From IMG/VR virus record IMGVR_UViG_3300028608_000006, positions 62,001 to 126,000 of that record: a DNA stretch of 64,000 nucleotides. One strand, written 5' to 3'. The notes beneath the pieces were generated by a model. The model had not been told where the DNA came from. It was given only the letters and a program-made list of their open reading frames with translations, and did no database searches. Both the position numbers and the translations under genes were made by a program. Position 1 is the first letter of the stretch. Every line of letters begins with the position of its first letter. Below are positions 52,265 to 64,000 of the stretch, piece after piece.

Positions 52265-52708
52265 CTAGTGTTGTAGCAGTAGCTTAGCCATATCGCGGCG
52301 TTTTTCCTTAAGACGCTCGATGTCGACATGGTCTTGCTTTACTTTCAACGGAGATCTGTCCAACGACTGAATCAAGGCCTCTTTTTGTCTGATCAAGTCA
52401 TCTAACGAATACACTCTCACGCCATTCACCACTTGAATGGCGACTCCCATGGGTAACTTTTGTAAGCTTACCTTCTCGTTATAATCCAGAAACGTACCGT
52501 GCTCCGTTACACGCTCCTTATCTGAACCCAGCAAGTAACGTTGGAACTCGTAAGTATCCGACGGTATCGACAAGTCCAGGTCATTGGTGCTGTCCCTTAA
52601 ACCCAACATCAATAAAGCGCCACCCGATGATACAACCACTTCGGACGGGCGTAATCCAATCTCGCTACAGAAATTGAAGTACTCCCGTTCAAACTCTATC
52701 AGGTCCAT
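52265..52708 (-). CDS. Pol-beta-superfamily nucleotidyltransferase (AbiEii/MenT-like motif)
   Basis: VVVSSGGALLMLGLRDSTNDLDL (GG...R..T.DxD), C-terminal QK...K...D; GAGGA RBS before ATG 52708. Confidence 0.7.
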   Translation of the reverse strand: MDLIEFEREYFNFCSEIGLRPSEVVVSSGGALLMLGLRDSTNDLDLSIPSDTYEFQRYLLGSDKERVTEHGTFLDYNEKVSLQKLPMGVAIQVVNGVRVYSLDDLIRQKEALIQSLDRSPLKVKQDHVDIERLKEKRRDMAKLLLQH

Positions 52709-52719
52709 GTGGGAAATCC

Positions 52720-52905
52720 TCAATTGAAGATGTTTACCACTGTACTTCGTAGGGCCGTGACCATTCGCTTTAACCAGGAGGATCTCCGAGGTAATCGGTT
52801 GCGAGAACCAACTATGTATTGTTGGTAGTCGGCGCTCCCCGAGGAATGGCCACGGTAGTAACTACGAGGTAACGGAGCAACAATGCGGTTACGTGCATTC
52901 AGCAT
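52720..52905 (-). CDS. Small basic hypothetical protein
   Basis: AGGA RBS before MLNARNR; short ORF. Confidence 0.45.
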   Translation of the reverse strand: MLNARNRIVAPLPRSYYRGHSSGSADYQQYIVGSRNRLPRRSSWLKRMVTALRSTVVNIFN

Positions 52906-52961
52906 AACTAATAGTCCTGTTGAGTTAAATAATAAATTGAGACGAGTAAAACAAAGAAAGG

Positions 52962-52989
52962 CTAACCCTGCCCGCAAGGGCAGGGTTAG
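52962..52989 (-). terminator. 12-bp perfect hairpin
   Basis: CTAACCCTGCCC-gcaa-GGGCAGGGTTAG. Confidence 0.8.
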
Positions 52990-52997
52990 TTTATTGC

Positions 52998-54245
52998 TTA
53001 GTGCTTGAAGCCCAGCATTTGAGCCATGGATGCATTCGGCGTTACGGCCGGCACAGACATGGTTGGAGCAGGCAGAGCAGCTGGGAGGCCGTCTGCGTTC
53101 GAGTTCAGCTTGCCAGCGATTGCGGTGTGAGCCATACGACCCAGGCCGGAACCCAGTGCACCAGCAGCCAGACCCAGAGTACCAGCGGCGGTGTAACGAC
53201 CGAACTCGCTACCGATGTGCTCGTCGAGCATGTCAGCGGCGAAGAAGGAACCGGCGATCGCTGCAACTGCACCGATACCCGAACCGATGCTCAGGCTACC
53301 GCTGTGACCGGTTTCCAGAGCTGCGCCCAGCAGAGCACCGCCAGCTGCAATCCAGCCAGAACGGATGCCTTCGTCACGCTCACCACGCAGGGAGAAACGC
53401 GAACGTGCTTCGACCGACTGACGCGCCGGTTTGAAACCTTCAGCGAACTTGATGAAGGCGGTCAGGGTTTCAGGGGTCTTGCTAACGAACGCGTAGAACT
53501 GTTCGTCGTTGCTCAGCTTGTCATTGGCAACAGCCTGAGCCTGAGGTTGCAGTTCCAGGTTGGCAGTCAGGAAAGCGTTGTACAGCTCGTTACGCTTGGC
53601 TTCGGTGTCGTAACCGATGGCCACTACTGCGGCCAGGTGCAGTTGGAACGGAGTTGGTTGGGCGGCAGTGTTCATGGTGTCTTCCTTAGCGGCAGTAGTG
53701 GTGGTGGAGTTGGTGGCGGTAGTGGTAGCGGTGTCTTGCTTGATTTCTTGACCCAGTGGCATTGCTTGTTGCTCCAGCGAAGTTGGTTGAGTGTCGGCGG
53801 CTTGCTCGAGTTCTACAGACTCGTTGACAGCCGGTGCAGCTTGTTCGGTTACTTGGGCGGCGGCAGGATCCACCCAGTTCTCTTTGACATTGTTGACATA
53901 GGTCTCGGCTGTTTGTTCAGCCAGTTCCAGTACACCAGTACCATGCAATTCATCAACCGGGATCAAGGTACCTTGGATCACGGGTGCATCAGAAGCAGGA
54001 TCGTTAGCCAGAGCCGGATCGGCTTTGCGAACCTGGTTCATGCTGAAGTCTGTTTCCAGCGCTTCGTTAACACGTTTCAGGAAAGCCTGACGTTGTTGCT
54101 TCTCCAGAAGCTTCTCGTCAAACATCACTGCACGGAGTACAGCTTGCAGCCGGCGTGGATTACCGCCGTTTGTTCTGATGGTCTTCAGAGCCTCGATAGT
54201 GGCTTCGAGGTTTGCTTCGTAGTCAGGAACGGAAATCGAATTCAT
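52998..54245 (-). CDS. Monocistronic early protein with an acidic linker and a C-terminal glycine-zipper membrane region
   Basis: AAGGAG RBS; its own promoter and terminator; GGALLGA, GSGIGA, GLAAGALGSG GxxxG helices. Confidence 0.8.
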   Translation of the reverse strand: MNSISVPDYEANLEATIEALKTIRTNGGNPRRLQAVLRAVMFDEKLLEKQQRQAFLKRVNEALETDFSMNQVRKADPALANDPASDAPVIQGTLIPVDELHGTGVLELAEQTAETYVNNVKENWVDPAAAQVTEQAAPAVNESVELEQAADTQPTSLEQQAMPLGQEIKQDTATTTATNSTTTTAAKEDTMNTAAQPTPFQLHLAAVVAIGYDTEAKRNELYNAFLTANLELQPQAQAVANDKLSNDEQFYAFVSKTPETLTAFIKFAEGFKPARQSVEARSRFSLRGERDEGIRSGWIAAGGALLGAALETGHSGSLSIGSGIGAVAAIAGSFFAADMLDEHIGSEFGRYTAAGTLGLAAGALGSGLGRMAHTAIAGKLNSNADGLPAALPAPTMSVPAVTPNASMAQMLGFKH

Positions 54246-54321
54246 TTGGTGTAACTCCTTGTCGGGAAAGTATTAGATTCTTTTAAGCAACACAAAGATA
54301 TTTGTATTACTTACTGTGATA

Positions 54322-54353
54322 GTTATATAGACCTGAAACAAACTGTAACTTAA
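54322..54353 (-). promoter_or_regulatory. phiKZ-type early promoter
   Basis: Minus strand TTAAGTTACA-n5-TTTCAGGTCTATATAAC. Confidence 0.75.
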
Positions 54354-54373
54354 AAATAAAAGCAAGCGGACAT

Positions 54374-54410
54374 ATACCCCCTTACCCCACATCAGTGGGG
54401 TAAGGGGTAT
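54374..54410. terminator. 16-bp hairpin with one bulge
   Basis: ATACCCCCTTACCCCAC-atca-GTGGGGTAAGGGGTAT. Confidence 0.75.
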
Positions 54411-54413
54411 TAG

Positions 54414-54845
54414 TTACTTACCGAGGCTGTACGCTTCGTTGGTAAAGGTCAACTTACGACCTGCCCAATCAGACAACACTTGATTGCACGCGAGGATGTC
54501 GTATTGGTTAAAGTCGTAGGTCAAACTCATGTGCGGGATGTACCCATTATAAGGAGTTTGATAACCACAGGCTTTTAACCGCAAGTGTTCCTCTTGCAGA
54601 TCCTTACTGGTCAAGCGAAAGATCAAACCGTCACCCAATACTTCGATAGCCACAACATGCGCTTCGAAGATACGGGTAGGGTCCAGCTTGGCCAGAGGTT
54701 CTTTGACATCACGCTCATCATAGATCAACGTGCTGTGGAAGTCGTGTTTCGGGGATGGAGCGATCCCAGCGCCACTCAGGAGAGTAATCAGCTCTGCTTC
54801 GAAGTCACTGGTCAGATCAACCGAGATGTAGCTGTAATCGGCCAT
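54414..54845 (-). CDS. acb1: Acb1/T4 gp57B-like 2H phosphodiesterase (anti-CBASS candidate)
   Basis: FHSTLIY and YIPHMSLTY 2H motifs, with spacing and context matching T4 57B as recalled (HSTICYS / YTPHITLSY); GAGG RBS before ATG 54845. Confidence 0.75.
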   Translation of the reverse strand: MADYSYISVDLTSDFEAELITLLSGAGIAPSPKHDFHSTLIYDERDVKEPLAKLDPTRIFEAHVVAIEVLGDGLIFRLTSKDLQEEHLRLKACGYQTPYNGYIPHMSLTYDFNQYDILACNQVLSDWAGRKLTFTNEAYSLGK

Positions 54846-54852
54846 GGCTGCC

Positions 54853-55572
54853 TCAGGAAGGATTAGGGGTGTCCAATACAATCCCTTGGCGGTTGTCGAT
54901 GATGTCCAAACAACGGAACACAGCAAAGACGCCTTGGTGTTCGGTCGACAGACGGTTCGCTTCTTCGAATGCCAGCGCCTTGGTCTGGTGACGGAACGGT
55001 ACATTGTGGAAATTCACCGCACCAGTCGGACCTACCTTGGAGATCACGTAGCGTCCCAAGGTCTTCGCGTACTTCGGCTTATAGCTGTTGGTGCCGGCGA
55101 TGGTCAGTTTGTTGTGGTACATCTGGAAACCTTCCCAGCGCGCATTCACCCACTGCATGACGTACTTATCCCGCGAGTCACGGTCCAGCACCTTTGGATC
55201 AAACGAGCCTTCTTCAAACAGCAGGTTCTCAAACTCCTCCCGCAGCGAACATTCCTTACGATCGGGACGTGCGGCTACAGGAGGCATCCCCTGACCCTGT
55301 TGCAACTCACGGGTGGTGCGGCGGGTCAGGGGAATGGCCACGACGTAAGGATCCGTGTCGTTAGCCGGGGTGAAGACCATTACCTGAGCATCTTCTTTTA
55401 CGTTTGGACCAATGCGTTCGTGCAGGACTTCTACCGCTTCTAGCAGGGCGGCTTCAACGTTAGGTTGCCCCAACTCTACGGTGCGCTTGTTTACCCATGC
55501 TTGATCAATTGCGCGCAGCGAGAGTGGTTCGGTGGACAAGAAATCCACCGGAGTCAGTTCTTGAACAGTCAT
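54853..55572 (-). CDS. Hypothetical protein
   Basis: 239 aa; C-terminal RHQTKALAFEEANRL...FAVF. Confidence 0.8.
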   Translation of the reverse strand: MTVQELTPVDFLSTEPLSLRAIDQAWVNKRTVELGQPNVEAALLEAVEVLHERIGPNVKEDAQVMVFTPANDTDPYVVAIPLTRRTTRELQQGQGMPPVAARPDRKECSLREEFENLLFEEGSFDPKVLDRDSRDKYVMQWVNARWEGFQMYHNKLTIAGTNSYKPKYAKTLGRYVISKVGPTGAVNFHNVPFRHQTKALAFEEANRLSTEHQGVFAVFRCLDIIDNRQGIVLDTPNPS

Positions 55573-55592
55573 TGCTTATTCTTTCCTTGAGT

Positions 55593-56060
55593 TTATTCGT
55601 GGCTACCAGGCACATCGAAGTTTGGCAGTCCTGGAAGATCACCGTCCAGAATCTCGGAAACCCAGCGCCCGCCAGCCATTTCGATCGCGCGCCAATCAGC
55701 AGTACCGCCGATTTGTTTGGCGTATTCGTTCAGCAGACGAGGATGGTAGTTGTGGTCGCCCATGAGGCAATGGCCGAGACGATCAGCGATTCTGGAAAGG
55801 TCATCGTGATCAGCACCTTCTACCCGACCATCCGGGTGCAGGACTTGGACCCCGTACCACTTGCAATAGTTTTCCATCGTCACAATGGGTTTGCCGAAAG
55901 TAGACGGCGACTGGCACAGCAGTGGAATACCACGTTGGCTTACGTAGACCTTTGTCTTCGGTTGCCCCGGAACCGAGACCCACTGGATGATGTGTGGGTC
56001 ACTCTCTTTATTTCGCCCCGGAACTTCTGTGGGTGCTTCTGGTTGAATTTCGTTCGCCAT
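55593..56060 (-). CDS. Hypothetical protein
   Basis: AGGGGAG RBS. Confidence 0.75.
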   Translation of the reverse strand: MANEIQPEAPTEVPGRNKESDPHIIQWVSVPGQPKTKVYVSQRGIPLLCQSPSTFGKPIVTMENYCKWYGVQVLHPDGRVEGADHDDLSRIADRLGHCLMGDHNYHPRLLNEYAKQIGGTADWRAIEMAGGRWVSEILDGDLPGLPNFDVPGSHE

Positions 56061-56338
56061 CTTTGTTTCTCCCCTGAAGAAGGTTGTTTAGGTCCAAATA
56101 TCTTGTCGTGGAATTTCATCGAAGCCACCATACCGAACGCAGCCCCACAACCCGCACTTATCCCAATGGTCCAATCTCCCTTAACTACTAGGGTAATGGC
56201 GGCTACGTCAAATGCCGCCATTAAGAACGATGTGAAAAACACAGAGCGGGTGTGGTTACCAATCACGTTCTTGTACTGGAACCCTTTTAGAAATACCGCG
56301 CAGAACGAAGAGGCAAGGCTGAGTCCGTATAGCAGCAT
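55940..56338 (-). CDS. Membrane protein (about three TMs)
   Basis: Hydrophobic N-terminal 85 aa; TGATG coupling to rnhA; 3' end overlaps the next gene by 121 nt. Confidence 0.65.
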   Translation of the reverse strand: MLLYGLSLASSFCAVFLKGFQYKNVIGNHTRSVFFTSFLMAAFDVAAITLVVKGDWTIGISAGCGAAFGMVASMKFHDKIFGPKQPSSGEKQRWRTKFNQKHPQKFRGEIKRVTHTSSSGSRFRGNRRQRST

Positions 56339-56823
56339 CAGCTTAGTCCACTGTATTCGGTGTCATGGGTGGTAGGAGCAGCTGCCGCGTCTTTGGCAAT
56401 CTGGTCGGCCAGTTCGTTATCAGGGATACCGGAGTGAGCCTTGACCTTGAAGAACTTAACCTTGTTCGTCCTGAGCAACTCGTTCAGGATAATCCACAGG
56501 TCTTTGTTCTTGACCATATTGCCATCACGTGTTAGCCAATCGTTGCGGTACCAATTGCGGACCCACTTAGTAGATCCGTCAATCGTGTACTGTGAGTCGG
56601 TATAGATGTTGATCTTTGCATTCGGGCCGAATTCTTCCAATGTGGCGATCACGGCCATGATCTCCATACGGTTGTTGGTGGTTAAGAAATAACCCTTGGC
56701 GAGTGTGACCATCTGGTCTCCGCATCGCACCACAGCACCGTAACCGCCCGGGCCGGGATTGCCGAGTGCACTCCCGTCCGTATAGGCTTCGTAAACAATT
56801 GGAGCCTTTTTAGCTTTTGCCAT
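56338..56823 (-). CDS. rnhA: Ribonuclease HI
   Basis: YTDGSALGNPGPGGYG, TTNNRMEIMA, YTDSQY, KNKDLW, VKAHSG...NELADQIA. Confidence 0.97.
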   Translation of the reverse strand: MAKAKKAPIVYEAYTDGSALGNPGPGGYGAVVRCGDQMVTLAKGYFLTTNNRMEIMAVIATLEEFGPNAKINIYTDSQYTIDGSTKWVRNWYRNDWLTRDGNMVKNKDLWIILNELLRTNKVKFFKVKAHSGIPDNELADQIAKDAAAAPTTHDTEYSGLS

Positions 56824-56826
56824 TAC

Positions 56827-57765
56827 CTACACCGTGTTTTGTTCCTGTTTAGCTTCCATCATTTCAATCACCTTGACCCTCGACTTCACAGAGTCAATGA
56901 GATGTTCGACAGCCGCTTCGATCATGGGAACTTCCCAGAACTTGGTTTGTTTGAGCAGACGTTCAGAAAGCTCTGGATCCGCTACGTCAAGCTCCCAATG
57001 AGAGCCACTAATGGCGACCATATAAGAACCCTTTGCAGCACGATAAAAGTTGAACCCGCCGTACTCGTTAAAGTCAATGCGGAAGTAGCCGAATGGGTTG
57101 TCGAAATTCAACGCCCCCGCGGTGTCGATTTCAACCCCACCCAGTGTGCAGCGGTTGATGCGGACAGGTCCTTCTGCTTCGATTTTACCGCCCTTCAGTT
57201 TAGTGCTGGACAGAGTGACGTCATCTTCGCCGCACAACCAAACCCCTTTAAGCTCGCTGGCAATGACTGTGACCAAACCCTTTGCTTTAATGACGGTGCC
57301 TTGGAGGGTTGAGGACTCGGTAACCATGATCCCCGACGGCGTTTCCGAATTCTTCACGGTGGAGTTCTGGATCAGCGCGTCCTTTACCCCGTACGTTGCG
57401 TGCGCGTCTTCGAACTCGCATTCGATCGTGCAGTTATCAAGGGTGCAGTTGTTGGTGGCGACATACTCCAAGACAACATACCCATGGAACACGTCATTGT
57501 TGCTGAAGGCGTTCTCGAGGGTGACAACCGCGAACGCTTCCAGAGGGGTCTTGGTGAACCCCGCCAAGTTCTGGTACAACGACGGATCGAAGTCCACCCG
57601 GGAGAAAGGATCCAAGTAGAAATGGATCTTGTCCTTGTCGTTGAGTTTGACCTCATAAAGACACCACGCACCGGGAGTGTCCTCCGTGATCATGGAAATC
57701 CCTGCTTTATCAGGAACTCGTTTTGTGCCGTTGATAAACAGACCTGTTTCTTCTACTTCACTCAT
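56827..57765 (-). CDS. Beta-solenoid repeat protein, tandem paralog 1 of 4
   Basis: ETGLFING, FYLDPFSRV, S/N/T/C-rich short repeats, C-terminal LIDSVKSRVKV. Confidence 0.85.
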   Translation of the reverse strand: MSEVEETGLFINGTKRVPDKAGISMITEDTPGAWCLYEVKLNDKDKIHFYLDPFSRVDFDPSLYQNLAGFTKTPLEAFAVVTLENAFSNNDVFHGYVVLEYVATNNCTLDNCTIECEFEDAHATYGVKDALIQNSTVKNSETPSGIMVTESSTLQGTVIKAKGLVTVIASELKGVWLCGEDDVTLSSTKLKGGKIEAEGPVRINRCTLGGVEIDTAGALNFDNPFGYFRIDFNEYGGFNFYRAAKGSYMVAISGSHWELDVADPELSERLLKQTKFWEVPMIEAAVEHLIDSVKSRVKVIEMMEAKQEQNTV

Positions 57766-57788
57766 ATTGACTCACCTCGGTGTGTTGA

Positions 57789-58796
57789 TTAGCAGACAGC
57801 GCTTAGACGCAGGTACTCTTGGTGACGATACCGCTCTATCGCCGTCATTACCTTGGTCCTAGACTCAATGCTGTCGTAGATGTATTGCAGGCAGCTTTCT
57901 TCGCTACCCTGCCTACGGTCCCTGAGAACTTGTTGAAGCACGTCCTCAACATTGGGATTATCCACAAAGACAGAAAAACGATCACCCCGAATATCCGGAG
58001 CAATAGCCCACTTGCAACCACCGGTTTGGTAGACGTAGAACTTAACTTTCGGTAGCACCACTTCTAGGAAGTACATAGGTCCGGGTACATGGATGGATTC
58101 CCCAGTGATGCGAACCTTTGGCCAGTTAACACGCTGGATCGTTAACAACCCATGCATGTTAACATGGGTATTCCATGCGTAAACGTCCTCCAGCAGAATC
58201 TGTCCGTCTGTATTGAACTTGGAGAATTGCATATCACATTGATCAACCAGAACCGTGTTGTCAGTCCTAGAGATTACAGTGACATCCTGCAAGGTGCTCC
58301 CCATCACCACAGCATCTTTCGAGAATCGTCCGTCGATAACTTCTGACTCGAGCAGTTCTAGTCGGATGTAGATGTTAAACATCTTTTCATCTACATCCCT
58401 CAGAATAAGGATCGAGGCAGAAAGATGGGACTCTGCGATTATGACGTTAACGAGCGTGCATTCGCCCTCAAACGTACACCGCTGGCTAACGGTGTCTACA
58501 AAAACAGCCCGACAGTATTCGTTGTCGACTACATCCTTATCCAGATCTTTCTGGAGCGTCAGGAAACGTTCACTGTCGATTTCAACACAAGACTCAGGAC
58601 ACAAGTAGAATTCGAGATTGAACTTCCCCACAGGAATGCTGTAGTAGTCCAGAACAATATCTGGATCCACTACGCCCAATTCAAAGGCGGCGGGTTTCCC
58701 CGCGCCTACGGCAACCTGCTTCACGCCGTCGAGAAACAGCCCAGGGGGGCACTTCTCTTTAGCAGGTCTTAATCCAAGCTCTTCCAGCAAACTCAT
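57789..58796 (-). CDS. Beta-solenoid repeat protein, tandem paralog 2 of 4
   Basis: GLFLDG, FYLCPESCV, IYDSIESRTKV. Confidence 0.85.
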   Translation of the reverse strand: MSLLEELGLRPAKEKCPPGLFLDGVKQVAVGAGKPAAFELGVVDPDIVLDYYSIPVGKFNLEFYLCPESCVEIDSERFLTLQKDLDKDVVDNEYCRAVFVDTVSQRCTFEGECTLVNVIIAESHLSASILILRDVDEKMFNIYIRLELLESEVIDGRFSKDAVVMGSTLQDVTVISRTDNTVLVDQCDMQFSKFNTDGQILLEDVYAWNTHVNMHGLLTIQRVNWPKVRITGESIHVPGPMYFLEVVLPKVKFYVYQTGGCKWAIAPDIRGDRFSVFVDNPNVEDVLQQVLRDRRQGSEESCLQYIYDSIESRTKVMTAIERYRHQEYLRLSAVC

Positions 58797-59731
58797 ATTG
58801 GATCTCCTAAAGTTTTCTCAAACTCAGCCCACAACGCTTGAATGAGATTACGACGTGAACGGATCGAGTCCATCACGTACTTGACTGTATCGTCGGGTAG
58901 CAGCTGTTCGCAGTCCACCAAGAGTTCTTTCAGTTTCCCTCGGAACTCTGGATCGTCTACGTTCATATCGAAGCCACCGCCTTGACGGGTGATGGCAAAC
59001 GCCTCACTGCCGGTTTGGTAGCAGTACAACGTCAGGCTCGGGAAGTCGATGCTGAAGAAGTACAGACGATTCGGAATGTGGCAATCGTCAATCTTCATGT
59101 ACATCTCGTTCATACGGCTGTCACAGATGCGAACGAAGTTAATCGCGTGCACACTGGTCTCGTTGAACTTACAACCATTGAGGTACAACGTGCCTCTCGC
59201 CGAGAACGAAGAGTTCTTCAGCGTGGAGCCTTCAATCCACACGCCAGCAGCTTCTGTGATGACCGTGGAGTTGATTACCGATGAATTGAGGATCGTACTA
59301 CCGTCCGAGATCGTAGCGTTCTCCAAACGCGACCCAGAGACACTGAGGTTAACCAGCGGGTGCAATTCGGAGATCTTCAATGAGGATCTGGAGATGTCCG
59401 AGTTACTGACCTTGCAGTTATTGGTGACACTGTTGTACAGCGTGCAGTTTCCAGTGAATGCATCCCGGTAGCTGCTGCTGTTCCTCACAATCACCCAAGC
59501 GTGGTTATCATCGTCATTCTCTTCATCAATATCGAGGTCGAGATAGTGCGACGAATCAATCTTCACCACGGACATGTGATCAAGGAAGAAGTGAACAGTG
59601 AGGATCCCCACCACTACCCGGTACTGACTGAACTCGCCGTCGCCAGCGTCTTCGTCAATCGACGGATTAGTGTTAGTACGGACGGGGTCCAACTTGTGAC
59701 CATCCAAGAACAAACCGGTTTCATGCTTCAT
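58793..59731 (-). CDS. Beta-solenoid repeat protein, tandem paralog 3 of 4
   Basis: ETGLFLDG, FFLDHMSVV, VMDSIRSRRNL. Confidence 0.85.
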   Translation of the reverse strand: MKHETGLFLDGHKLDPVRTNTNPSIDEDAGDGEFSQYRVVVGILTVHFFLDHMSVVKIDSSHYLDLDIDEENDDDNHAWVIVRNSSSYRDAFTGNCTLYNSVTNNCKVSNSDISRSSLKISELHPLVNLSVSGSRLENATISDGSTILNSSVINSTVITEAAGVWIEGSTLKNSSFSARGTLYLNGCKFNETSVHAINFVRICDSRMNEMYMKIDDCHIPNRLYFFSIDFPSLTLYCYQTGSEAFAITRQGGGFDMNVDDPEFRGKLKELLVDCEQLLPDDTVKYVMDSIRSRRNLIQALWAEFEKTLGDPI

Positions 59732-59791
59732 CTTTTAGCTCCTAAGCAAAACATAATCCACCGGAGTTTCCCCCGGTGGATTAGCGTTCAG

Positions 59792-61291
59792 TTAGACTGC
59801 GTAGATGTCGTCCCAAGGCCTTGTGCGGTCACCAACTTCGCGGACAAGCTGTTTAGCTTCATCCAACAGGCGAACGACTTTCAAACGAGACGTGATCGAG
59901 TCAGTCAAGTAACTGGCAACGCTACGGGAAAGGGAAGTAGGTTGAGTGTAGAAACCTTCCGGGTCCAAAGACAACTGGCAGGCTACAACTTTTTCGATTT
60001 CTTCCTTCGGTGCATCCAGGCGTAGACGCTCCATGTTGTGCAGGTTCACGCCGAGATCGAAGTCACGACGGGTGGCACGAACCATGTACATTTTGTGCTG
60101 CGGGGTATCAATCTCCAGGTAGCAGAACTTGTTGGGGATGTAGATCGAGTTGGCCTTGATGTGAGCGCCAGTAAAGCGGGAGTACTTCAACAACAGTTCG
60201 CCTTCGCTGTTCACGCCGCACTTGGTCAGGTGGTTGCCCTTCAGTGTAACTCGAGTACCACGGATGTGGCAGTCGAAGATCTGGCAAGTGCCGACCTGAA
60301 CGTAGCCAGCGCTGCTGATCTGGCTGTCGTGAACCTGCGAATCACGGTACTCGCCCTTACTGATCGAGGAGTTGAAAACCGAGGTACGCTTGAACAGACA
60401 TTCCCGTACATTGAAGCGTTCTTTCACTTCTTTGCTAACCGGTGTCGGCTCGTCGCTCATGTGACCGAAACCACGCGGGTAGTTCGGATCATGTTCCTTG
60501 GTGCACGCCAACACGGCGTTGTTCAACAGGTTGTAAGCCGACTCGGTATTGATGAGGGTCGACTCACCCAGCACGATGTCGTCATTACTGGACGAGTTGA
60601 TCAGCACCAGCACGCCACGGTTGGGAACGTTCTGACGACGGTGGTAGTCCAAACGAGCATCACCGCCACCCACACTGACAGTGGAGTTGCTGTCCAGCAG
60701 GTAATACGCTTCCACATCACCAGCACGCAAACGATACAGAGAGAACACCTTGTCCGTGTACAGCTGGGAGATCGGGTGCGGCAGGTAGAACGGAGTTTCC
60801 AGGTGCTGGCTGCGGATACGGTTGTAGTCGACTTTCAACCCGGTTTCAATCGGATCTTGCAACACGCCTTCGTACATGAAGGTACCCTGAGCCTGAACCC
60901 GCATGACCGCATCAGCTACGGCTTCGGAGATCAGGCTATCCGGATCACGACCAGCCGCTTTCAACACACGCTCGGCGTTCTTGATCTGACGATCAGTTGG
61001 TGCTTCTTCGACCACCACATGTTCGAACACAGGAGAGAAGCCCAGCCCCTTGGACGGCTTGTGGTAATCGACGATCGGTGGTTGAGGCTCATCGACAATC
61101 AGCGCGAGATTGCGCTTCTTCTTTTCAGCGACGATTTCTGGCAGGGTCACGTAGCTGGTATCGCCCGCTGCCTTCTTCTGAGCATCGAGATCTTTGACAA
61201 TCTCAACGGTTTCATTCACAAGTTCCCCGACAATACCCTCGGGAGACTGAGTATCTTCCTTGATCTTTACAACTTTGTCCGTCTTACTCAT
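59792..61291 (-). CDS. Beta-solenoid repeat protein with an N-terminal extension, tandem paralog 4 of 4
   Basis: ETGLKVD, YLLDSNSTV, LTDSITSRLKV. Confidence 0.85.
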   Translation of the reverse strand: MSKTDKVVKIKEDTQSPEGIVGELVNETVEIVKDLDAQKKAAGDTSYVTLPEIVAEKKKRNLALIVDEPQPPIVDYHKPSKGLGFSPVFEHVVVEEAPTDRQIKNAERVLKAAGRDPDSLISEAVADAVMRVQAQGTFMYEGVLQDPIETGLKVDYNRIRSQHLETPFYLPHPISQLYTDKVFSLYRLRAGDVEAYYLLDSNSTVSVGGGDARLDYHRRQNVPNRGVLVLINSSSNDDIVLGESTLINTESAYNLLNNAVLACTKEHDPNYPRGFGHMSDEPTPVSKEVKERFNVRECLFKRTSVFNSSISKGEYRDSQVHDSQISSAGYVQVGTCQIFDCHIRGTRVTLKGNHLTKCGVNSEGELLLKYSRFTGAHIKANSIYIPNKFCYLEIDTPQHKMYMVRATRRDFDLGVNLHNMERLRLDAPKEEIEKVVACQLSLDPEGFYTQPTSLSRSVASYLTDSITSRLKVVRLLDEAKQLVREVGDRTRPWDDIYAV

Positions 61292-63252
61292 AGTGGGGCT
61301 CCAGCTTTGATCTGTTGAATGAGTGCGTCGATGCTCGTGGCAGCGGTTGCGTTAATCCTAGGAATATCTTGTTCAGTAGCTTTTAGTATCTTGCTCTGAC
61401 CAGGCTTCTCCCCAATGAGGAGGTAGTTACAATCCTTGGTGAGTTTATCCACCAGCTCAATACCATGATCCCCGAAGTAGCTTTCCAGTTCTTCTCGGGT
61501 TTGACCGATCGTACCTGTGATGCACACCTTCAGTTCAGTGATAGGGCCTTCCGGTTCAGTCCGCACAACGATGTTCTGCAACATGCGTTCGGCGTTTTCT
61601 TTGAACTCTTCACTTTCAAAGCTCAAAGCAATCGGAATCGACAACCCCGCAGAGAACCCAGGAATCTTGATCAGTTCGTCGGCATTACCCAACCACTGAA
61701 GTAAGTTCACATTCCCCGGCCATGCAGCAGCCAGCTTCTTGGCACGTGTCAGATCAACGCCCGGCAGACCCAGCGCCTTAATGACACGGGACAGTGGTTG
61801 ACCCTTACGCACTTCCTGAATGCGGTTGTAGATCTTCTCACCCACTACGCGTTCGTTTAGAAGAAGGATGTCCACCGGTGCCTTGATGTAACCCTGTTCA
61901 ACCAGCTCAGCGATGGTCACAGGACCCAGATCGTCGATATCCAGCGTGCGTTTGTGCGCAAGGTTCACGCAACGTAGCACAAGCTGTGCAGGACAGTCTG
62001 TGACGTTCGTACAGATGAGATCGGCGCTCTGCTTGGTGATACGCTTCTCCAGCGGCATCATGCAGCTAGGGCACTCCTCAGGTGCTTTGAAGAGCTCGGC
62101 TTCACCATGCTCGATCACACGATTCAGACGAGGAATCACGTCACCGTTACGGGTAACACCGATGACAGAACCTTTACGCAGCTCCAAAGCAAGGAACTGT
62201 TTATAGTTGTCCAGCAGCGTACGAGAACAGATCACCCCGCCGATACGAGTAGGGGTATAGATCCCCACCGGCACCACACGACCAGTGCGAGTTGTGTTCC
62301 ACTCGATATCGGTCAGACTGGTTGCCACTTCCACATCTGGATACTTGTACGCCAGCGCCCAGTTCGGGTACTTGTTGGTGACCCCCAGTTGATCTTGCAA
62401 GTCAAAGTTATCGACCTTGATCACAATACCGTCAGCAGGCCAGTCCTTGCTGTTGATGTTCTCCCGGATAGCTTCTAGAGACGCCACAGGTGCGCAGTGG
62501 AAGCCGAGCAGGGTCAGGTGGTTACGCAGTTGACTGTACTTCTGGAAACCCAGTCGACTGCTGCACGAGTAAGCGCCAAATCGCAGAAGACCTTTCACCG
62601 CCGGGTTCTGGTTCTCCGGCAGAGCACGCACCCAACCACTGACTGCGTTACGAGGGGTAGCAGCTTGTTTAACCGCCGTCTCGTTGTACAGTTCAAACTC
62701 GTGGTTGGCAATGTGACCTTCACCTCGGATAGAGATGGTGCCTGGCACAGGCACGTTGTGCAGGTCGGTTAACACCGTTGGGATATTCAGGCCAAACAAT
62801 GGCAGAGCATGAGTCACATCCTCACCCACCAGACCCGAACCCCGGGTAACCATGGAAACCAGTGGTCCATCCACGTAAGTCAGTTCCAGCGCCAGCCCGT
62901 CCAACTTAAGTTCATAGAAGAACTCAGTGTCTTCCGGAAACCGTGCGAGGAACTTATCAACCGCTTCTTGGTTCAGCCCTTTCTTCAGGCTGAGCATTGG
63001 CGAGTCAAAGGTCACCGCTTTCAAGCCTTCATTAGTAGGCTCGTGGATCGGCACAGGTTTGCGGGCAGTCTCGAACAACTCGGCAACTTCCGGGTGTTCT
63101 TCGGCCAACTCTTCGAAACGTTCTACCAGTTTGTCGTAGGCGTAATCGGGGATCTCCGAGGTGTCCTTGTTGAAATACAGATCCGCGTGGTACATGATGT
63201 CACGATTGAGATCGTTCATCTCGGCGAAGATTGTTTTGTGTTTTGCTTTCAT
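61288..63252 (-). CDS. ligA: NAD+-dependent DNA ligase
   Basis: N-terminal YF...EIPDYAYD, MLSL, ELKLDG (adenylation Lys), TRGSGLVGEDVT, PRNAVSG, DGIVIK, C4 Zn finger, HhH, C-terminal BRCT (CITG...GEKPGQSKILKA). Start set at MKAKHK. Confidence 0.97.
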   Translation of the reverse strand: MKAKHKTIFAEMNDLNRDIMYHADLYFNKDTSEIPDYAYDKLVERFEELAEEHPEVAELFETARKPVPIHEPTNEGLKAVTFDSPMLSLKKGLNQEAVDKFLARFPEDTEFFYELKLDGLALELTYVDGPLVSMVTRGSGLVGEDVTHALPLFGLNIPTVLTDLHNVPVPGTISIRGEGHIANHEFELYNETAVKQAATPRNAVSGWVRALPENQNPAVKGLLRFGAYSCSSRLGFQKYSQLRNHLTLLGFHCAPVASLEAIRENINSKDWPADGIVIKVDNFDLQDQLGVTNKYPNWALAYKYPDVEVATSLTDIEWNTTRTGRVVPVGIYTPTRIGGVICSRTLLDNYKQFLALELRKGSVIGVTRNGDVIPRLNRVIEHGEAELFKAPEECPSCMMPLEKRITKQSADLICTNVTDCPAQLVLRCVNLAHKRTLDIDDLGPVTIAELVEQGYIKAPVDILLLNERVVGEKIYNRIQEVRKGQPLSRVIKALGLPGVDLTRAKKLAAAWPGNVNLLQWLGNADELIKIPGFSAGLSIPIALSFESEEFKENAERMLQNIVVRTEPEGPITELKVCITGTIGQTREELESYFGDHGIELVDKLTKDCNYLLIGEKPGQSKILKATEQDIPRINATAATSIDALIQQIKAGAPL

Positions 63253-63321
63253 CGAAAAAACCTGCAAGCATAAATAAGGGTATATAAGGAGCCTGAGGAT
63301 AGTCCCCAAGCTCCTTATACT

Positions 63322-63657
63322 TCAGTGCAGTGTACGTGTAGTCGGTGCGCTGATAAACGACTCAGCTGACCCGATGATTCCACCCACCGTAATAACAGTA
63401 GGTCGGTCGAACATCAGGTGTAAATCTAAATGCCACAGGAAACTCCACATCACCGCTGTGTTGTTTGCTTCGTGTTCCATGATCTCAGCGGCGAAACGGT
63501 GTACGGTGGGATGCAACATCATGGACAGCTTCGGAGCCTCGCGAGCATGCCCCATGAGGACATCCATACAAGTCTTGTCAACTACCACTTCATCGGGTGT
63601 TAAATCGAACGCATGCAGAAAACTGCGGTACGTCCAAATCAATTGTTCTTTGTTCAT
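63322..63657 (-). CDS. Degenerate nucleotidyltransferase-like paralog (N-lobe only, GG and DxD lost)
   Basis: YRSFLHAFDLTPDEVVV...LMGHAR aligns with YFNFCSEIGLRPSEVVV...MLGLR of 52265; AAGGGG RBS before ATG 63657. Confidence 0.6.
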   Translation of the reverse strand: MNKEQLIWTYRSFLHAFDLTPDEVVVDKTCMDVLMGHAREAPKLSMMLHPTVHRFAAEIMEHEANNTAVMWSFLWHLDLHLMFDRPTVITVGGIIGSAESFISAPTTRTLH

Positions 63658-63760
63658 GCAGTCACCCCTTAGAAGGGTATCCGGTCTGTGGGCGGAGAGT
63701 TCCATTACGATGGTCAACCCAGTCATCAATAACGGTGTAATGGAACCCCACCCCAGAACC

Positions 63761-64000
63761 TTAGGCCATCCGCGCGGTTAGTCGGGGTGACCTCACTAGG
63801 GATTCCAGCTGAACGATCTCCATCAGATCTCGCTCACGCTTTCCCGGTTTACGGTTAGGCATGTTTGCCAGGTGCCGTTTCTGGATTAGCATTTCCCGTG
63901 CGCTGTAACAATACACGCCGTCAATGCATGCTAACCCGGTATCTTCGCTCAATTCGTGTAGATCGATAAACGGATCGTACACTATTCGCGGGCTTACGTT
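63761..64000 (-). CDS. 3' part of another nucleotidyltransferase-family paralog; 5' end lies beyond the window
   Basis: IDGVYCYSAREMLIQK...R.P.K...D matches VNGVRVYSLDDLIRQK...R.P.K...D of 52265; the frame is open to base 64000. Confidence 0.7.
   Translation of the reverse strand, partial: NVSPRIVYDPFIDLHELSEDTGLACIDGVYCYSAREMLIQKRHLANMPNRKPGKRERDLMEIVQLESLVRSPRLTARMA

What the first reader, a model, noticed from the sequence alone, without database searches (positions are those of the whole stretch)
52265..64000. Three-member nucleotidyltransferase family: one intact, one catalytically degenerate, one truncated by the window
Seen: 52265 has GG...R..T.DLD and the C-terminal QK...K..D. 63322 keeps the N-terminal scaffold (Y..F....L.P.EVVV....++G..R) but has lost GG and DxD. 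63761->64000 matches the C-lobe. Established: AbiEii/MenT-type NTases modify tRNA ends, and other pol-beta NTases (CD-NTases) make immune signals. Inference: a phage NTase acting on host tRNA or proteins, with a pseudo-enzyme paralog as regulator or as a decoy for host NTase-based defence. An Acb1-like gene lies 2 kb away.
Basis: partly seen in the sequence, partly recalled or inferred. Interest (0 to 1): 0.6.

Follow-up and report, generated by a model that had tools for sequence, protein, structure and literature searches.

The report
Jumbo-phage mini-nucleotidyltransferases with dead paralog
A soil jumbo phage related to Pseudomonas phage EL carries two apparently active copies and one catalytically dead but well-conserved copy of a very small, uncharacterised nucleotidyltransferase, a family spread through large phages whose target is still unknown.

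Summary
The window lies in a complete 231.8-kb phage genome that contains exactly three members of one family, all on the minus strand.

- **A** (52265-52708, 147 aa) carries the catalytic motifs.
- **B** (63322-63657, 111 aa) is degenerate.
- **C** (63761 to beyond the window) is cut only by the window. In the genome it is a full 145-aa gene with an intact GG...DLD motif.

A high-confidence AlphaFold model of A (pLDDT 97.8) has a pol-beta nucleotidyltransferase fold. Its nearest solved structures are LnuA, TM1012, MenT1, giant-virus poly(A) polymerase and ANT(2''), all at Z about 10. CD-NTases are far away (Z about 4).

B is a true paralog (hhalign 96%, E 1e-9). It has lost the GG, Arg and DxD residues and the whole C-terminal K/D helical lobe. 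It is nevertheless under purifying selection as strong as C and the neighbouring ligase (dN/dS about 0.08), so it is a pseudo-enzyme and not a pseudogene.

New findings:
- In every EL-like phage examined, C is followed by a degenerate paralog: B, or a DxN type called D here (EL gp121).
- A belongs to a different clade of the family.
- A is preceded by a conserved small basic ORF.

The family has more than 570 sequence clusters (phrog_12854), is absent from Pfam and has no literature. Substrate and role remain inferred.

The parts
52265..52708 (-). NTase A, 147 aa from ATG 52708 (the listed ORF starts at TTG 52723). Core motifs are intact (G29 G30, R38, T41, D43xD45, K109, R118, K122, D126, D129), but the family's D-L-H strand reads S-L-Q.
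   Evidence: AF2 pLDDT 97.8. NTase fold matches. phrog_12854 E 5.5e-20.
52720..52905 (-). Small basic ORF (61 aa, pI 11.8). Its stop lies 11 nt before A's ATG and overlaps A's ribosome-binding site. Conserved as a 53-61 aa ORF in all four relatives examined.
   Evidence: Indels are in frame and dN/dS is 0.23-0.70. No Pfam or PHROG hit.
52923..52934 (-). Invariant 12-mer TATTATTTAACT, 18 nt upstream of the small ORF. Candidate promoter or regulatory site of the small-ORF/A unit.
   Evidence: Invariant in 5 genomes. Unique in the window.
52962..52989 (-). Terminator-like hairpin (12 bp, 8 GC) after the 415-aa gene. It separates that gene from the small-ORF/A unit.
   Evidence: The stem is conserved with a changed loop in L025.
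63322..63657 (-). Paralog B, 111 aa. It has the NTase N-terminal core without GG, Arg or DxD and without the C-terminal K/D helices, so it is a pseudo-enzyme under purifying selection.
   Evidence: SD sequence AAGGGG before the ATG.
63282..63320 (-). Terminator-like hairpin (18 pairs) directly after B's stop and before the NAD-dependent DNA ligase gene.
   Evidence: L002 986-1024, converted to window coordinates.
63761..64000 (-). C-terminal 79 codons of NTase C. The full gene is 145 aa and runs on to genome position G000:C1:126198 (L002:1465-1902, minus strand). It is the canonical member, ortholog of phage EL gp120.
54414..54845 (-). Acb1-family 2H phosphoesterase, about 143 aa from M54 of the listed ORF. 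It carries two H-x-[ST] motifs. It is a neighbour, not shown to be functionally linked.
   Evidence: Pfam PF23474 48.2 bits against a cutoff of 27. phrog_755. Orthologs of 142 aa.

Best explanation
A and C are minimal (145-147 aa), metal-dependent pol-beta-superfamily nucleotidyltransferases. They belong to a large, uncharacterised and, as far as sampled, mainly phage-borne family (phrog_12854) that is distantly related to DUF6036 and to AbiEii/MenT.

Shown:
- the fold;
- the conserved G-G/R/DxD N-lobe and K...D..D C-terminal helices;
- exactly three copies in the genome;
- B is a diverged paralog that lacks every catalytic residue and the whole C-lobe, yet evolves under strong purifying selection;
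- in every EL-like jumbo phage examined, the canonical gene C is immediately followed by at least one degenerate paralog: D with DxN, B, or both;
- A comes from another clade of the family and sits in its own two-gene unit behind a conserved small basic ORF.

Inferred:
- C transfers a nucleotide from an NTP to a hydroxyl acceptor, most likely an RNA 3' end, as MenT toxins and viral poly(A) polymerases do;
- the dead paralog B (D in phage EL) is a non-catalytic partner or regulator of C, not a relic;
- A does related chemistry under separate control, possibly modulated by the small basic protein.
For: Fold. The AF2 model of A has pLDDT 97.8 and pTM 0.90. VIA-align gives LnuA Z 10.2, TM1012 10.2, MenT1 10.1, Megavirus PAP 10.1, ANT(2'') 9.6, TglT/MenT3 9.4 and MenT4 7.2. 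The Foldseek top hits are the same group.

Motifs. Across 138 family members the conservation is G29 93%, R38 96%, D43 91%, D45 93%, K109 89% and D126 99%. An N-terminal pol-beta Asp plus a C-terminal Lys and Asp are the residues required in MenT3 (D80, K189, D211; PMC7450476).

B as paralog. hhalign 96.4%, E 1.4e-9. The AF2 model of B has pLDDT 86.8 and the same topology minus the C-terminal helices, and it matches the same PDB neighbours at Z 5.3-6.5.

Selection. dN/dS is 0.07-0.12 for B, 0.06-0.10 for C and 0.06-0.10 for the ligase. B orthologs are all 110-111 aa.

Pairing. The arrangements are C+B in the window's genome and L022-L024; C+D+B in L003/L014; and C+D in L009, L010, L013, L015 and EL gp120/gp121. 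All six D sequences have D-x-N.

Lean towards nucleic acid:
- the locus is conserved next to an SMC-like gene, the NAD-dependent ligase and RNase H;
- structure-related Atlas clusters are fused to RNase III or RNase HII;
- viral poly(A) polymerases recur among the hits.

A's unit.. A soil metatranscriptome contig covers A, most of the small ORF and the next gene, but not the upstream hairpin. This is suggestive only.
Against: - No biochemical data exist for any member, and no literature was found.
- The best structural matches include small-molecule enzymes (LnuA, ANT(2'')) at the same Z as the RNA enzymes.
- Some family members are fused to GNAT and NUDIX domains.
- The proteins are acidic overall (pI 5.2-5.6; family median 5.75), which is not what one expects of an RNA binder.
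- Position 81, the candidate third carboxylate, is Ser in A and in 26% of the family.
- Gene neighbourhoods outside EL-like phages are uninformative.
- The B model rests on an alignment dominated by family members, so its fold is partly inherited from them.
- Physical pairing of C with B or D is inferred from adjacency and co-occurrence only.
Confidence: 0.5

Rival explanations
1. A and C are small-molecule nucleotidyltransferases like LnuA or ANT(2''). They would adenylylate or otherwise inactivate an antibiotic-like anti-phage compound or a nucleotide signal. B would be an inactive binder (sponge) of the same ligand.
For: LnuA (Z 10.2) and ANT(2'')-Ia (Z 9.6) tie with the RNA enzymes and are the same size. 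Family members are fused to GNAT and GNAT+NUDIX domains; from general knowledge, this recalls bifunctional aminoglycoside-modifying enzymes. The overall pI is acidic. An Acb1-family signal-degrading enzyme lies near A.
Against: The conserved C-terminal K...D..D motif is the DUF1814-type signature (PMC7450476) and was not compared residue by residue with LnuA or ANT(2''). Relatives found by structure are fused to RNase III and RNase HII. The conserved locus holds ligase, RNase H and an SMC-like gene. B lacks the C-lobe that would form half of any ligand pocket.
Confidence: 0.2
2. The small basic ORF plus A form a toxin-antitoxin-like module: a MenT1/MenA1-style NTase toxin held in check by a small protein. 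The phage would use it for host shut-off, superinfection exclusion or addiction. C+B would be a second such pair, with the dead paralog acting as antitoxin.
For: There is a tight two-gene arrangement, with a basic 53-61 aa ORF ending 11-36 nt before the acidic NTase in five genomes. MenA1 is a 68-aa protein that blocks MenT1 active sites (PMC10435456). MenT1 is among the best fold matches. AbiEi and Rv2827c-type antitoxin structures also appear among the fold hits (Z 7.7 and 6.5), which is a precedent for NTase-like non-catalytic partners.
Against: The small ORF has no detectable homology to any antitoxin. Its dN/dS is only moderately low (0.23-0.70). Most family members in other phages are single genes. 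No toxicity data exist. The C+B complex prediction gave no verdict.
Confidence: 0.15
3. A and C nucleotidylylate proteins, as MntA AMPylates HepT and GlnE adenylylates glutamine synthetase. The target could be a host defence or translation factor, or the Tyr-rich small ORF product itself.
For: Pol-beta NTases include protein-modifying enzymes (general knowledge). The small ORF conserves several Tyr residues (YYRG, DYQxY).
Against: No MNT or GlnE structure is among the top matches. No HEPN partner is present. This reading is purely speculative.
Confidence: 0.07
4. B is a decaying remnant of a tandem duplication with no function of its own.
For: It has lost every catalytic residue and the C-terminal third. 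It is absent from phage EL and from all deposited phage genomes.
Against: dN/dS is 0.07-0.12 at dS 0.75 to above 1.3, equal to C and the ligase. Its length is a constant 110-111 aa in seven genomes down to 48% identity. It has a good SD sequence. 56 columns are invariant among six orthologs.
Confidence: 0.04

Closest known systems
AbiEii / MenT (DUF1814, PF08843) nucleotidyltransferase toxins
   Same: Pol-beta NTase fold: MenT1 Z 10.1 over 130 residues, MenT3/TglT 9.4, MenT4 7.2. The layout also agrees, with an N-terminal G[GS]...DxD and a C-terminal conserved Lys and Asp, like MenT3 D80/K189/D211 (PMC7450476). Weak PADLOC AbiEii hits for A (E 3e-4).
   Different: No Pfam PF08843 hit even at E 10. 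About 145 aa instead of 190-290. Phage-encoded. No AbiEi/COG5340 or kinase antitoxin gene. Acidic. tRNA activity untested.
DUF6036 (PF19502) / Thermotoga TM1012 putative nucleotidyltransferase
   Same: TM1012 Z 10.2. A few family members and fusions give sub-threshold DUF6036 hits (E 1.4e-4 to 5e-3). Atlas neighbours carry DUF6036 in 12-13% of members. Both are of unknown function.
   Different: A, B and C give no DUF6036 hit at all. The phage family forms its own PHROG (12854).
LnuA and ANT(2'')-Ia antibiotic nucleotidyltransferases
   Same: Same size and fold (Z 10.2 and 9.6; Foldseek E 8e-4 to 3e-2). GNAT fusions occur in the family.
   Different: No sequence-level similarity (profile against PDB sequences found nothing). 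No resistance context. Encoded by a phage.
Mimivirus/Megavirus and poxvirus poly(A) polymerases
   Same: Top Foldseek hit (4wse, E 7e-4). Megavirus PAP Z 10.1 over 140 residues. Viral PAPs recur in BFVD. From general knowledge, the giant-virus enzymes combine an active and an inactive NTase-like module, which parallels the C plus dead-paralog pair.
   Different: Those are proteins of about 500 aa with both modules in one chain. Here the modules are separate genes of 111-164 aa. Polyadenylation by these phages is not known.
RlaP (PF10127), the RNA-ligase-associated pol-beta NTase of jumbo phages
   Same: A jumbo-phage pol-beta NTase proposed to repair RNA ends (PMC7824862). The family here also lies near a ligase and a 2H enzyme.
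   Different: No PF10127 hit. The adjacent ligase is an NAD-dependent DNA ligase, not an RNA ligase.
CD-NTases (cGAS/DncV-like)
   Same: Same superfamily fold at a distance.
   Different: Z is only 4.0-4.1 and Foldseek probability is low. There is no support for immune-signal synthesis.

Membership tests
Pol-beta nucleotidyltransferase superfamily | hG[GS]-x9-13-Dh[DE]h motif | tested here: met
   A has SGG-x12-DLD and C has AGG-x12-DLD. B does not meet it (K[TS] ... KLS).
Pol-beta nucleotidyltransferase superfamily | alpha-beta-alpha-beta-alpha-beta core fold matching solved NTases | tested here: met
   AF2 pLDDT 97.8. Seven PDB NTases at Z 9.4-10.2 covering 122-140 of 147 residues.
Pol-beta nucleotidyltransferase superfamily | third catalytic carboxylate on a neighbouring strand | tested here: inconclusive
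   The candidate column 81 is D in C, in B and in 56% of the family, but S in A and in 26% of the family.
AbiEii/MenT (DUF1814, PF08843) | match to the family HMM | tested here: not met
   No Pfam hit for A, B or C at E up to 10. Only weak partial PADLOC AbiEii hits for A (E 3e-4 and 2.7e-3).
AbiEii/MenT (DUF1814, PF08843) | C-terminal motifs III and IV (conserved Lys and Asp needed for activity) | tested here: inconclusive
   K109 (89%) and D126 (99%) are conserved in the C-terminal helices, 17 residues apart; MenT4 K171/D186 are 15 apart and MenT3 K189/D211 are 22 apart (PMC7450476). Equivalence was not checked by superposition.
AbiEii/MenT (DUF1814, PF08843) | adjacent cognate antitoxin (AbiEi/COG5340, MenA-type) | tested here: not met
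   Neighbours have no such domains. A small basic ORF precedes A, but its homology is unknown.
AbiEii/MenT (DUF1814, PF08843) | NTP-dependent extension of tRNA 3' ends; toxicity | not testable with these tools
   Needs biochemistry and expression tests.
DUF6036 (PF19502) | HMM match above the gathering score (23.6 bits) | tested here: not met
   0 hits for A, B and C. Three of 138 relatives hit at E below 0.01. The best fusion proteins score 18.4-22.1 bits.
phrog_12854 (unknown function) | HMM match | tested here: met
   A 5.5e-20, C fragment 1.5e-7, D-type P0042 4.7e-13. B is only marginal (0.0073, residues 1-50).
Pseudo-enzyme (for B) | homologous to an enzyme family, catalytic residues lost, sequence still under purifying selection | tested here: met
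   homology; residues lost; dN/dS 0.07-0.12.
Acb1 (PF23474), for the neighbouring gene | HMM match above gathering; two H-x-[ST] motifs | tested here: met
   48.2 bits against 27. HST and HMS are seen in the translation. Cleavage of cyclic nucleotides was not tested.

The most novel reading that the evidence does not exclude
EL-like (by kinship, presumably nucleus-forming) jumbo phages may use an obligate pair of a minimal NTase and a dead paralog (C with D or B). This would be a split version of the active/inactive two-module viral poly(A) polymerases, adding untemplated tails to RNA 3' ends (host tRNAs or phage transcripts). A second, horizontally acquired copy (A) would be gated by a small basic protein in a toxin-antitoxin-like unit. 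That would be a new phage RNA-tailing system built from pseudo-enzyme partnerships.
Probability: 0.15. Interest if true: 0.7.

Novelty: new variant of a known kind. Interest (0 to 1): 0.45.

Why it matters
The family is large: 571 clusters at 50% identity have E at or below 1e-3. It is present in well-known jumbo phages, by sequence in EL and Ralstonia RP12 and by predicted structure in 201phi2-1, PhiEaH1, Phabio and Noxifer. It is unannotated in Pfam and unstudied.

Its nearest characterised relatives either poison translation by tailing tRNAs (MenT) or inactivate antibiotics (LnuA, ANT). Either activity in a phage would be a new host-takeover or counter-defence mechanism.

A canonical enzyme next to a conserved dead paralog recurs across the EL-like phages examined. 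This gives a clean, testable case of pseudo-enzyme partnership in a viral genome. EL gp120/gp121 offer a cultivable system in which to test it.

Tried and rejected
- Pfam, NCBIfam and PADLOC scans of A, B and C gave nothing usable. The only hits were weak PADLOC AbiEii matches for A.
- A profile search against PDB sequences found only chance hits.
- Complex prediction of C with B scored 0.12 and 0.07, below the mark. The tool gives no verdict, so this is evidence neither way.
- The search for related loci with the B profile in viral contigs found nothing.
- In prokaryote genomes the A+C profile found nothing with a single narrow pattern, which says little.
- tblastn of B and of the D-type P0042 against deposited phages found no match.
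- Neighbourhood scans in non-EL phages gave only dark matter and one SspB-like gene. tRNA genes lie near one relative only.
- Literature searches for DUF6036, EL gp120 and phage minimal NTases found nothing relevant.
- The conserved leader before A was tested as a structured RNA. There is no Rfam hit, the RNAalifold consensus is weak and the covariation term is unfavourable, so this reading was rejected in favour of a small ORF.
- The invariant 12-mer is not a repeated promoter motif in the window and does not resemble the annotated EL promoter.
- The CD-NTase reading was rejected on fold distance.
- No other genetic code was used.


Full report
**Setting**

The window is positions 62001-126000 of a 231,788-bp virus record that CheckV rates complete. 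The nearest named phages are the Pseudomonas phage EL group (Elvirus): the C protein is 48% identical to EL gp120. More distant relatives are Ralstonia RP12/RP31/FLC and Pseudomonas D6 and RVTF4. Near-identical DNA occurs in soil, rhizosphere and digester metagenomes. Gene order matches EL: SMC-like gene, small gene, NTase(s), NAD-dependent DNA ligase, gp123-like gene(s), RNase H, then a 2H phosphoesterase.

**Observation**

Three minus-strand ORFs form one family.
- A is at 52265-52723. The real start is very probably the ATG at 52708, which follows an AGGA box, because all homologs are 147 aa and begin MD.
- B is 111 aa from the ATG at 63657, which has an AAGGGG box upstream.
- C is cut by the window end. 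In the genome it is a complete 145-aa gene with SAGGAL..R..T.DLDVD.

Pairwise and profile statistics:

| Comparison | Result |
|---|---|
| A vs C fragment, BLASTP | E 2e-6 |
| A vs B, BLASTP | E 0.012 |
| B profile vs A+C profile, hhalign | 96.4%, E 1.4e-9, B residues 1-94 |
| A+C family HMM on all six-frame ORFs of the genome | exactly these three |

One addition: 'truncated' applies to the window only.

**Fold**

An exhaustive profile search found 571 representative proteins at E at or below 1e-3, and 264 at or below 1e-10. Most are stand-alone proteins of 130-150 aa. With 138 of them as the alignment, AlphaFold models A at pLDDT 97.8 and pTM 0.90.

VIA-align against 48,161 PDB representatives gives a tight top group:

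| Structure | Z |
|---|---|
| LnuA | 10.2 |
| TM1012 | 10.2 |
| MenT1 | 10.1 |
| Megavirus poly(A) polymerase | 10.1 |
| ANT(2'')-Ia | 9.6 |
| 5UVD | 9.4 |
| TglT/MenT3 | 9.4 |

JHP933-like, AbiEi, MenT4 and Rv2827c follow. CCA-adding enzymes, TUTases, Pol X and CD-NTases come only at Z 4-5. Foldseek agrees. The refutation condition '52265 lacks an NTase fold' is therefore not met.

Family-wide conserved positions (A numbering, 147-aa form) are G29, R38, T41, D43, D45, H83, G96, Y100, K109, R118, K122, D126 and D129. This is an N-terminal pol-beta motif plus a Lys and Asp in the C-terminal helices. It is the arrangement described for DUF1814 toxins, where MenT3 D80, K189 and D211 are all required (PMC7450476; four motifs also in PMC10435456).

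By HMM, however, the proteins are not DUF1814 or DUF6036 members. They belong to phrog_12854, which has no assigned function.

**The dead paralog**

In B the GG is K[TS], the DLD is KLS, and the Arg column is not conserved. The protein ends just after the last core strand, so K109, R118, K122, D126 and D129 have no counterpart. B does keep the L-D-L-H strand.

Its AlphaFold model has pLDDT 86.8 and the same order of elements as A up to residue 97, followed by a disordered tail. It hits the same PDB neighbours at Z 5.3-6.5. The alignment behind this model is mostly family members, which is a caveat.

B is not a relic:
- orthologs in six other contigs are all 110-111 aa, at 48-91% identity;
- Nei-Gojobori dN/dS is 0.07-0.12, against 0.06-0.10 for C and 0.06-0.10 for the ligase in the same genome pairs.

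Alignment of the EL-like loci separates four types.
- C: canonical.
- D: GGGGA..R..T.D[LI]N.W. The second metal-binding Asp is Asn in all six sequences, and the DLH strand is replaced. Includes EL gp121.
- B: as described above.
- A: catalytic motifs kept, DLH strand replaced.

The gene after C is always a degenerate paralog:

| Genomes or loci | Arrangement |
|---|---|
| EL, L009, L010, L013, L015 | C + D |
| L003/L014 | C + D + B |
| Window genome, L022, L023, L024 | C + B |

Family members in other phages are single genes.

A quick maximum-likelihood tree recovers A, B and D each as a clade (SH-aLRT 98-100). It places A among proteins of unrelated phages, such as P0049 and P0050, rather than with C. 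This agrees with the identities: 43-48% to those proteins and 24-30% to C. The careful tree search did not finish, and the deep branches are weak.

A is therefore not a recent duplicate of C. B scores better against C-type than D-type sequences, so it probably arose from a C-like copy.

**A's own unit**

Between the 415-aa gene and A lies about 290 nt that is 85% identical to a relative whose A protein is only 71% identical. It contains three features:
- a terminator-like hairpin at 52962-52989;
- an invariant 12-mer at 52923-52934;
- an ORF of 61 aa at 52720-52905.

This ORF is present in all five genomes at 53-61 aa. Its indels are in frame, its pI is 9.4-11.8 and its dN/dS is 0.23-0.70. It ends 11-36 nt before A's ATG. 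It has no family match, and the stretch is not a convincing structured RNA.

A soil metatranscriptome holds a 1,170-nt contig that covers the next gene, A and the small ORF up to 52888, with nothing over the hairpin. This fits a separate transcription unit. However, contigs cannot show RNA ends, and DNA carry-over is possible.

The order Acb1-like gene, 415-aa gene, small ORF, A is conserved in relatives.

**What it does**

No member has been studied. Evidence leaning to nucleic-acid ends:
- the DUF1814-like motif set;
- MenT and viral poly(A) polymerases among the top matches;
- the conserved locus with ligase, RNase H and an SMC-like gene;
- structure-related Atlas clusters fused to RNase III or RNase HII.

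Evidence leaning to small molecules:
- LnuA and ANT(2'') at equal Z;
- GNAT and GNAT+NUDIX fusions within the family;
- acidic pI.

I rank an RNA 3'-end transferase with a non-catalytic partner first. A small-molecule transferase comes second and a toxin-antitoxin-like module third. The only direct test available here, complex prediction of C with B, returned no verdict and counts neither way.

**Comparison and novelty**

The proteins work like, and are folded like, AbiEii/MenT, LnuA and ANT-type minimal NTases, but they fail the HMM membership tests for DUF1814 and DUF6036. The superfamily is known. What is new:
- a 145-aa phage clade of considerable size;
- the systematic pairing of an intact enzyme with a conserved DxN or fully stripped paralog in EL-like phages;
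- the small-ORF/NTase unit.

Hence 'new variant of a known kind', with moderate interest.

**Limits**

Structural superpositions at residue level were not possible. The family's presence in bacteria is only hinted at by Atlas neighbours in Bacillota. Host and expression timing are unknown.

Noticed in passing
window 52720-52905 (-): Unannotated small basic ORF (61 aa; consensus PLP..YYRG..G..DYQ.YIV..R....LKR.V.AL.EL) directly upstream of NTase A. It is conserved in four relatives and called as a gene in only two of them. An invariant 12-mer, TATTATTTAACT, lies 18 nt before it at 52923-52934.
   Followed up: yes
window 56827-61291 (-): Four tandem paralogs (312, 335, 312 and 499 aa) between the ligase and RNase H, all related to the single EL gp123 (BLASTP E 1e-28 to 4e-5). 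They share a C-terminal DSI.SR.KV motif and have no Pfam family. This is a lineage-specific expansion of unknown function.
   Followed up: partly
L002:1847-1902 (genome side of the window end) and L022-L024: The 156-aa gene upstream of C overlaps C's start by 56 nt in another frame. The same overlap is kept in the relatives. This gene is absent from phage EL.
   Followed up: no
window 52998-54245 (-): 415-aa protein (phrog_29858, unknown function) with an acidic Thr/Ala/Gln-rich middle and a Gly/Ala-rich, membrane-like C-terminal third. It is conserved between the Acb1-like gene and the small-ORF/A unit in all relatives.
   Followed up: no
window 54414-55004 (-): The Acb1-family gene is listed as a 196-aa ORF, but orthologs are 142 aa. 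The likely start is M54 (window 54845). The long ORF overlaps the end of the 239-aa gene upstream.
   Followed up: partly
L003:6438-6911 and L016:6456-6950 (EL gp121): D-type paralogs have GGGG and D-x-N-x-W in all six genomes, a conserved substitution of the second metal ligand. This type is missing from the window's genome, where only B follows C.
   Followed up: yes
proteins P0086, P0147, P0108 (metagenomic relatives): Family NTase domain fused to GNAT acetyltransferase (two proteins) and to GNAT plus NUDIX (one protein). Other members of 215-347 aa carry extensions of unknown kind.
   Followed up: partly
BFVD hits W8CZP8 and W8CZZ7 (Erwinia phage PhiEaH1): PhiEaH1 has a 156-aa and a 117-aa structural match to A. 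This may be another long-plus-short pair in a different jumbo phage. Not examined at sequence level.
   Followed up: no
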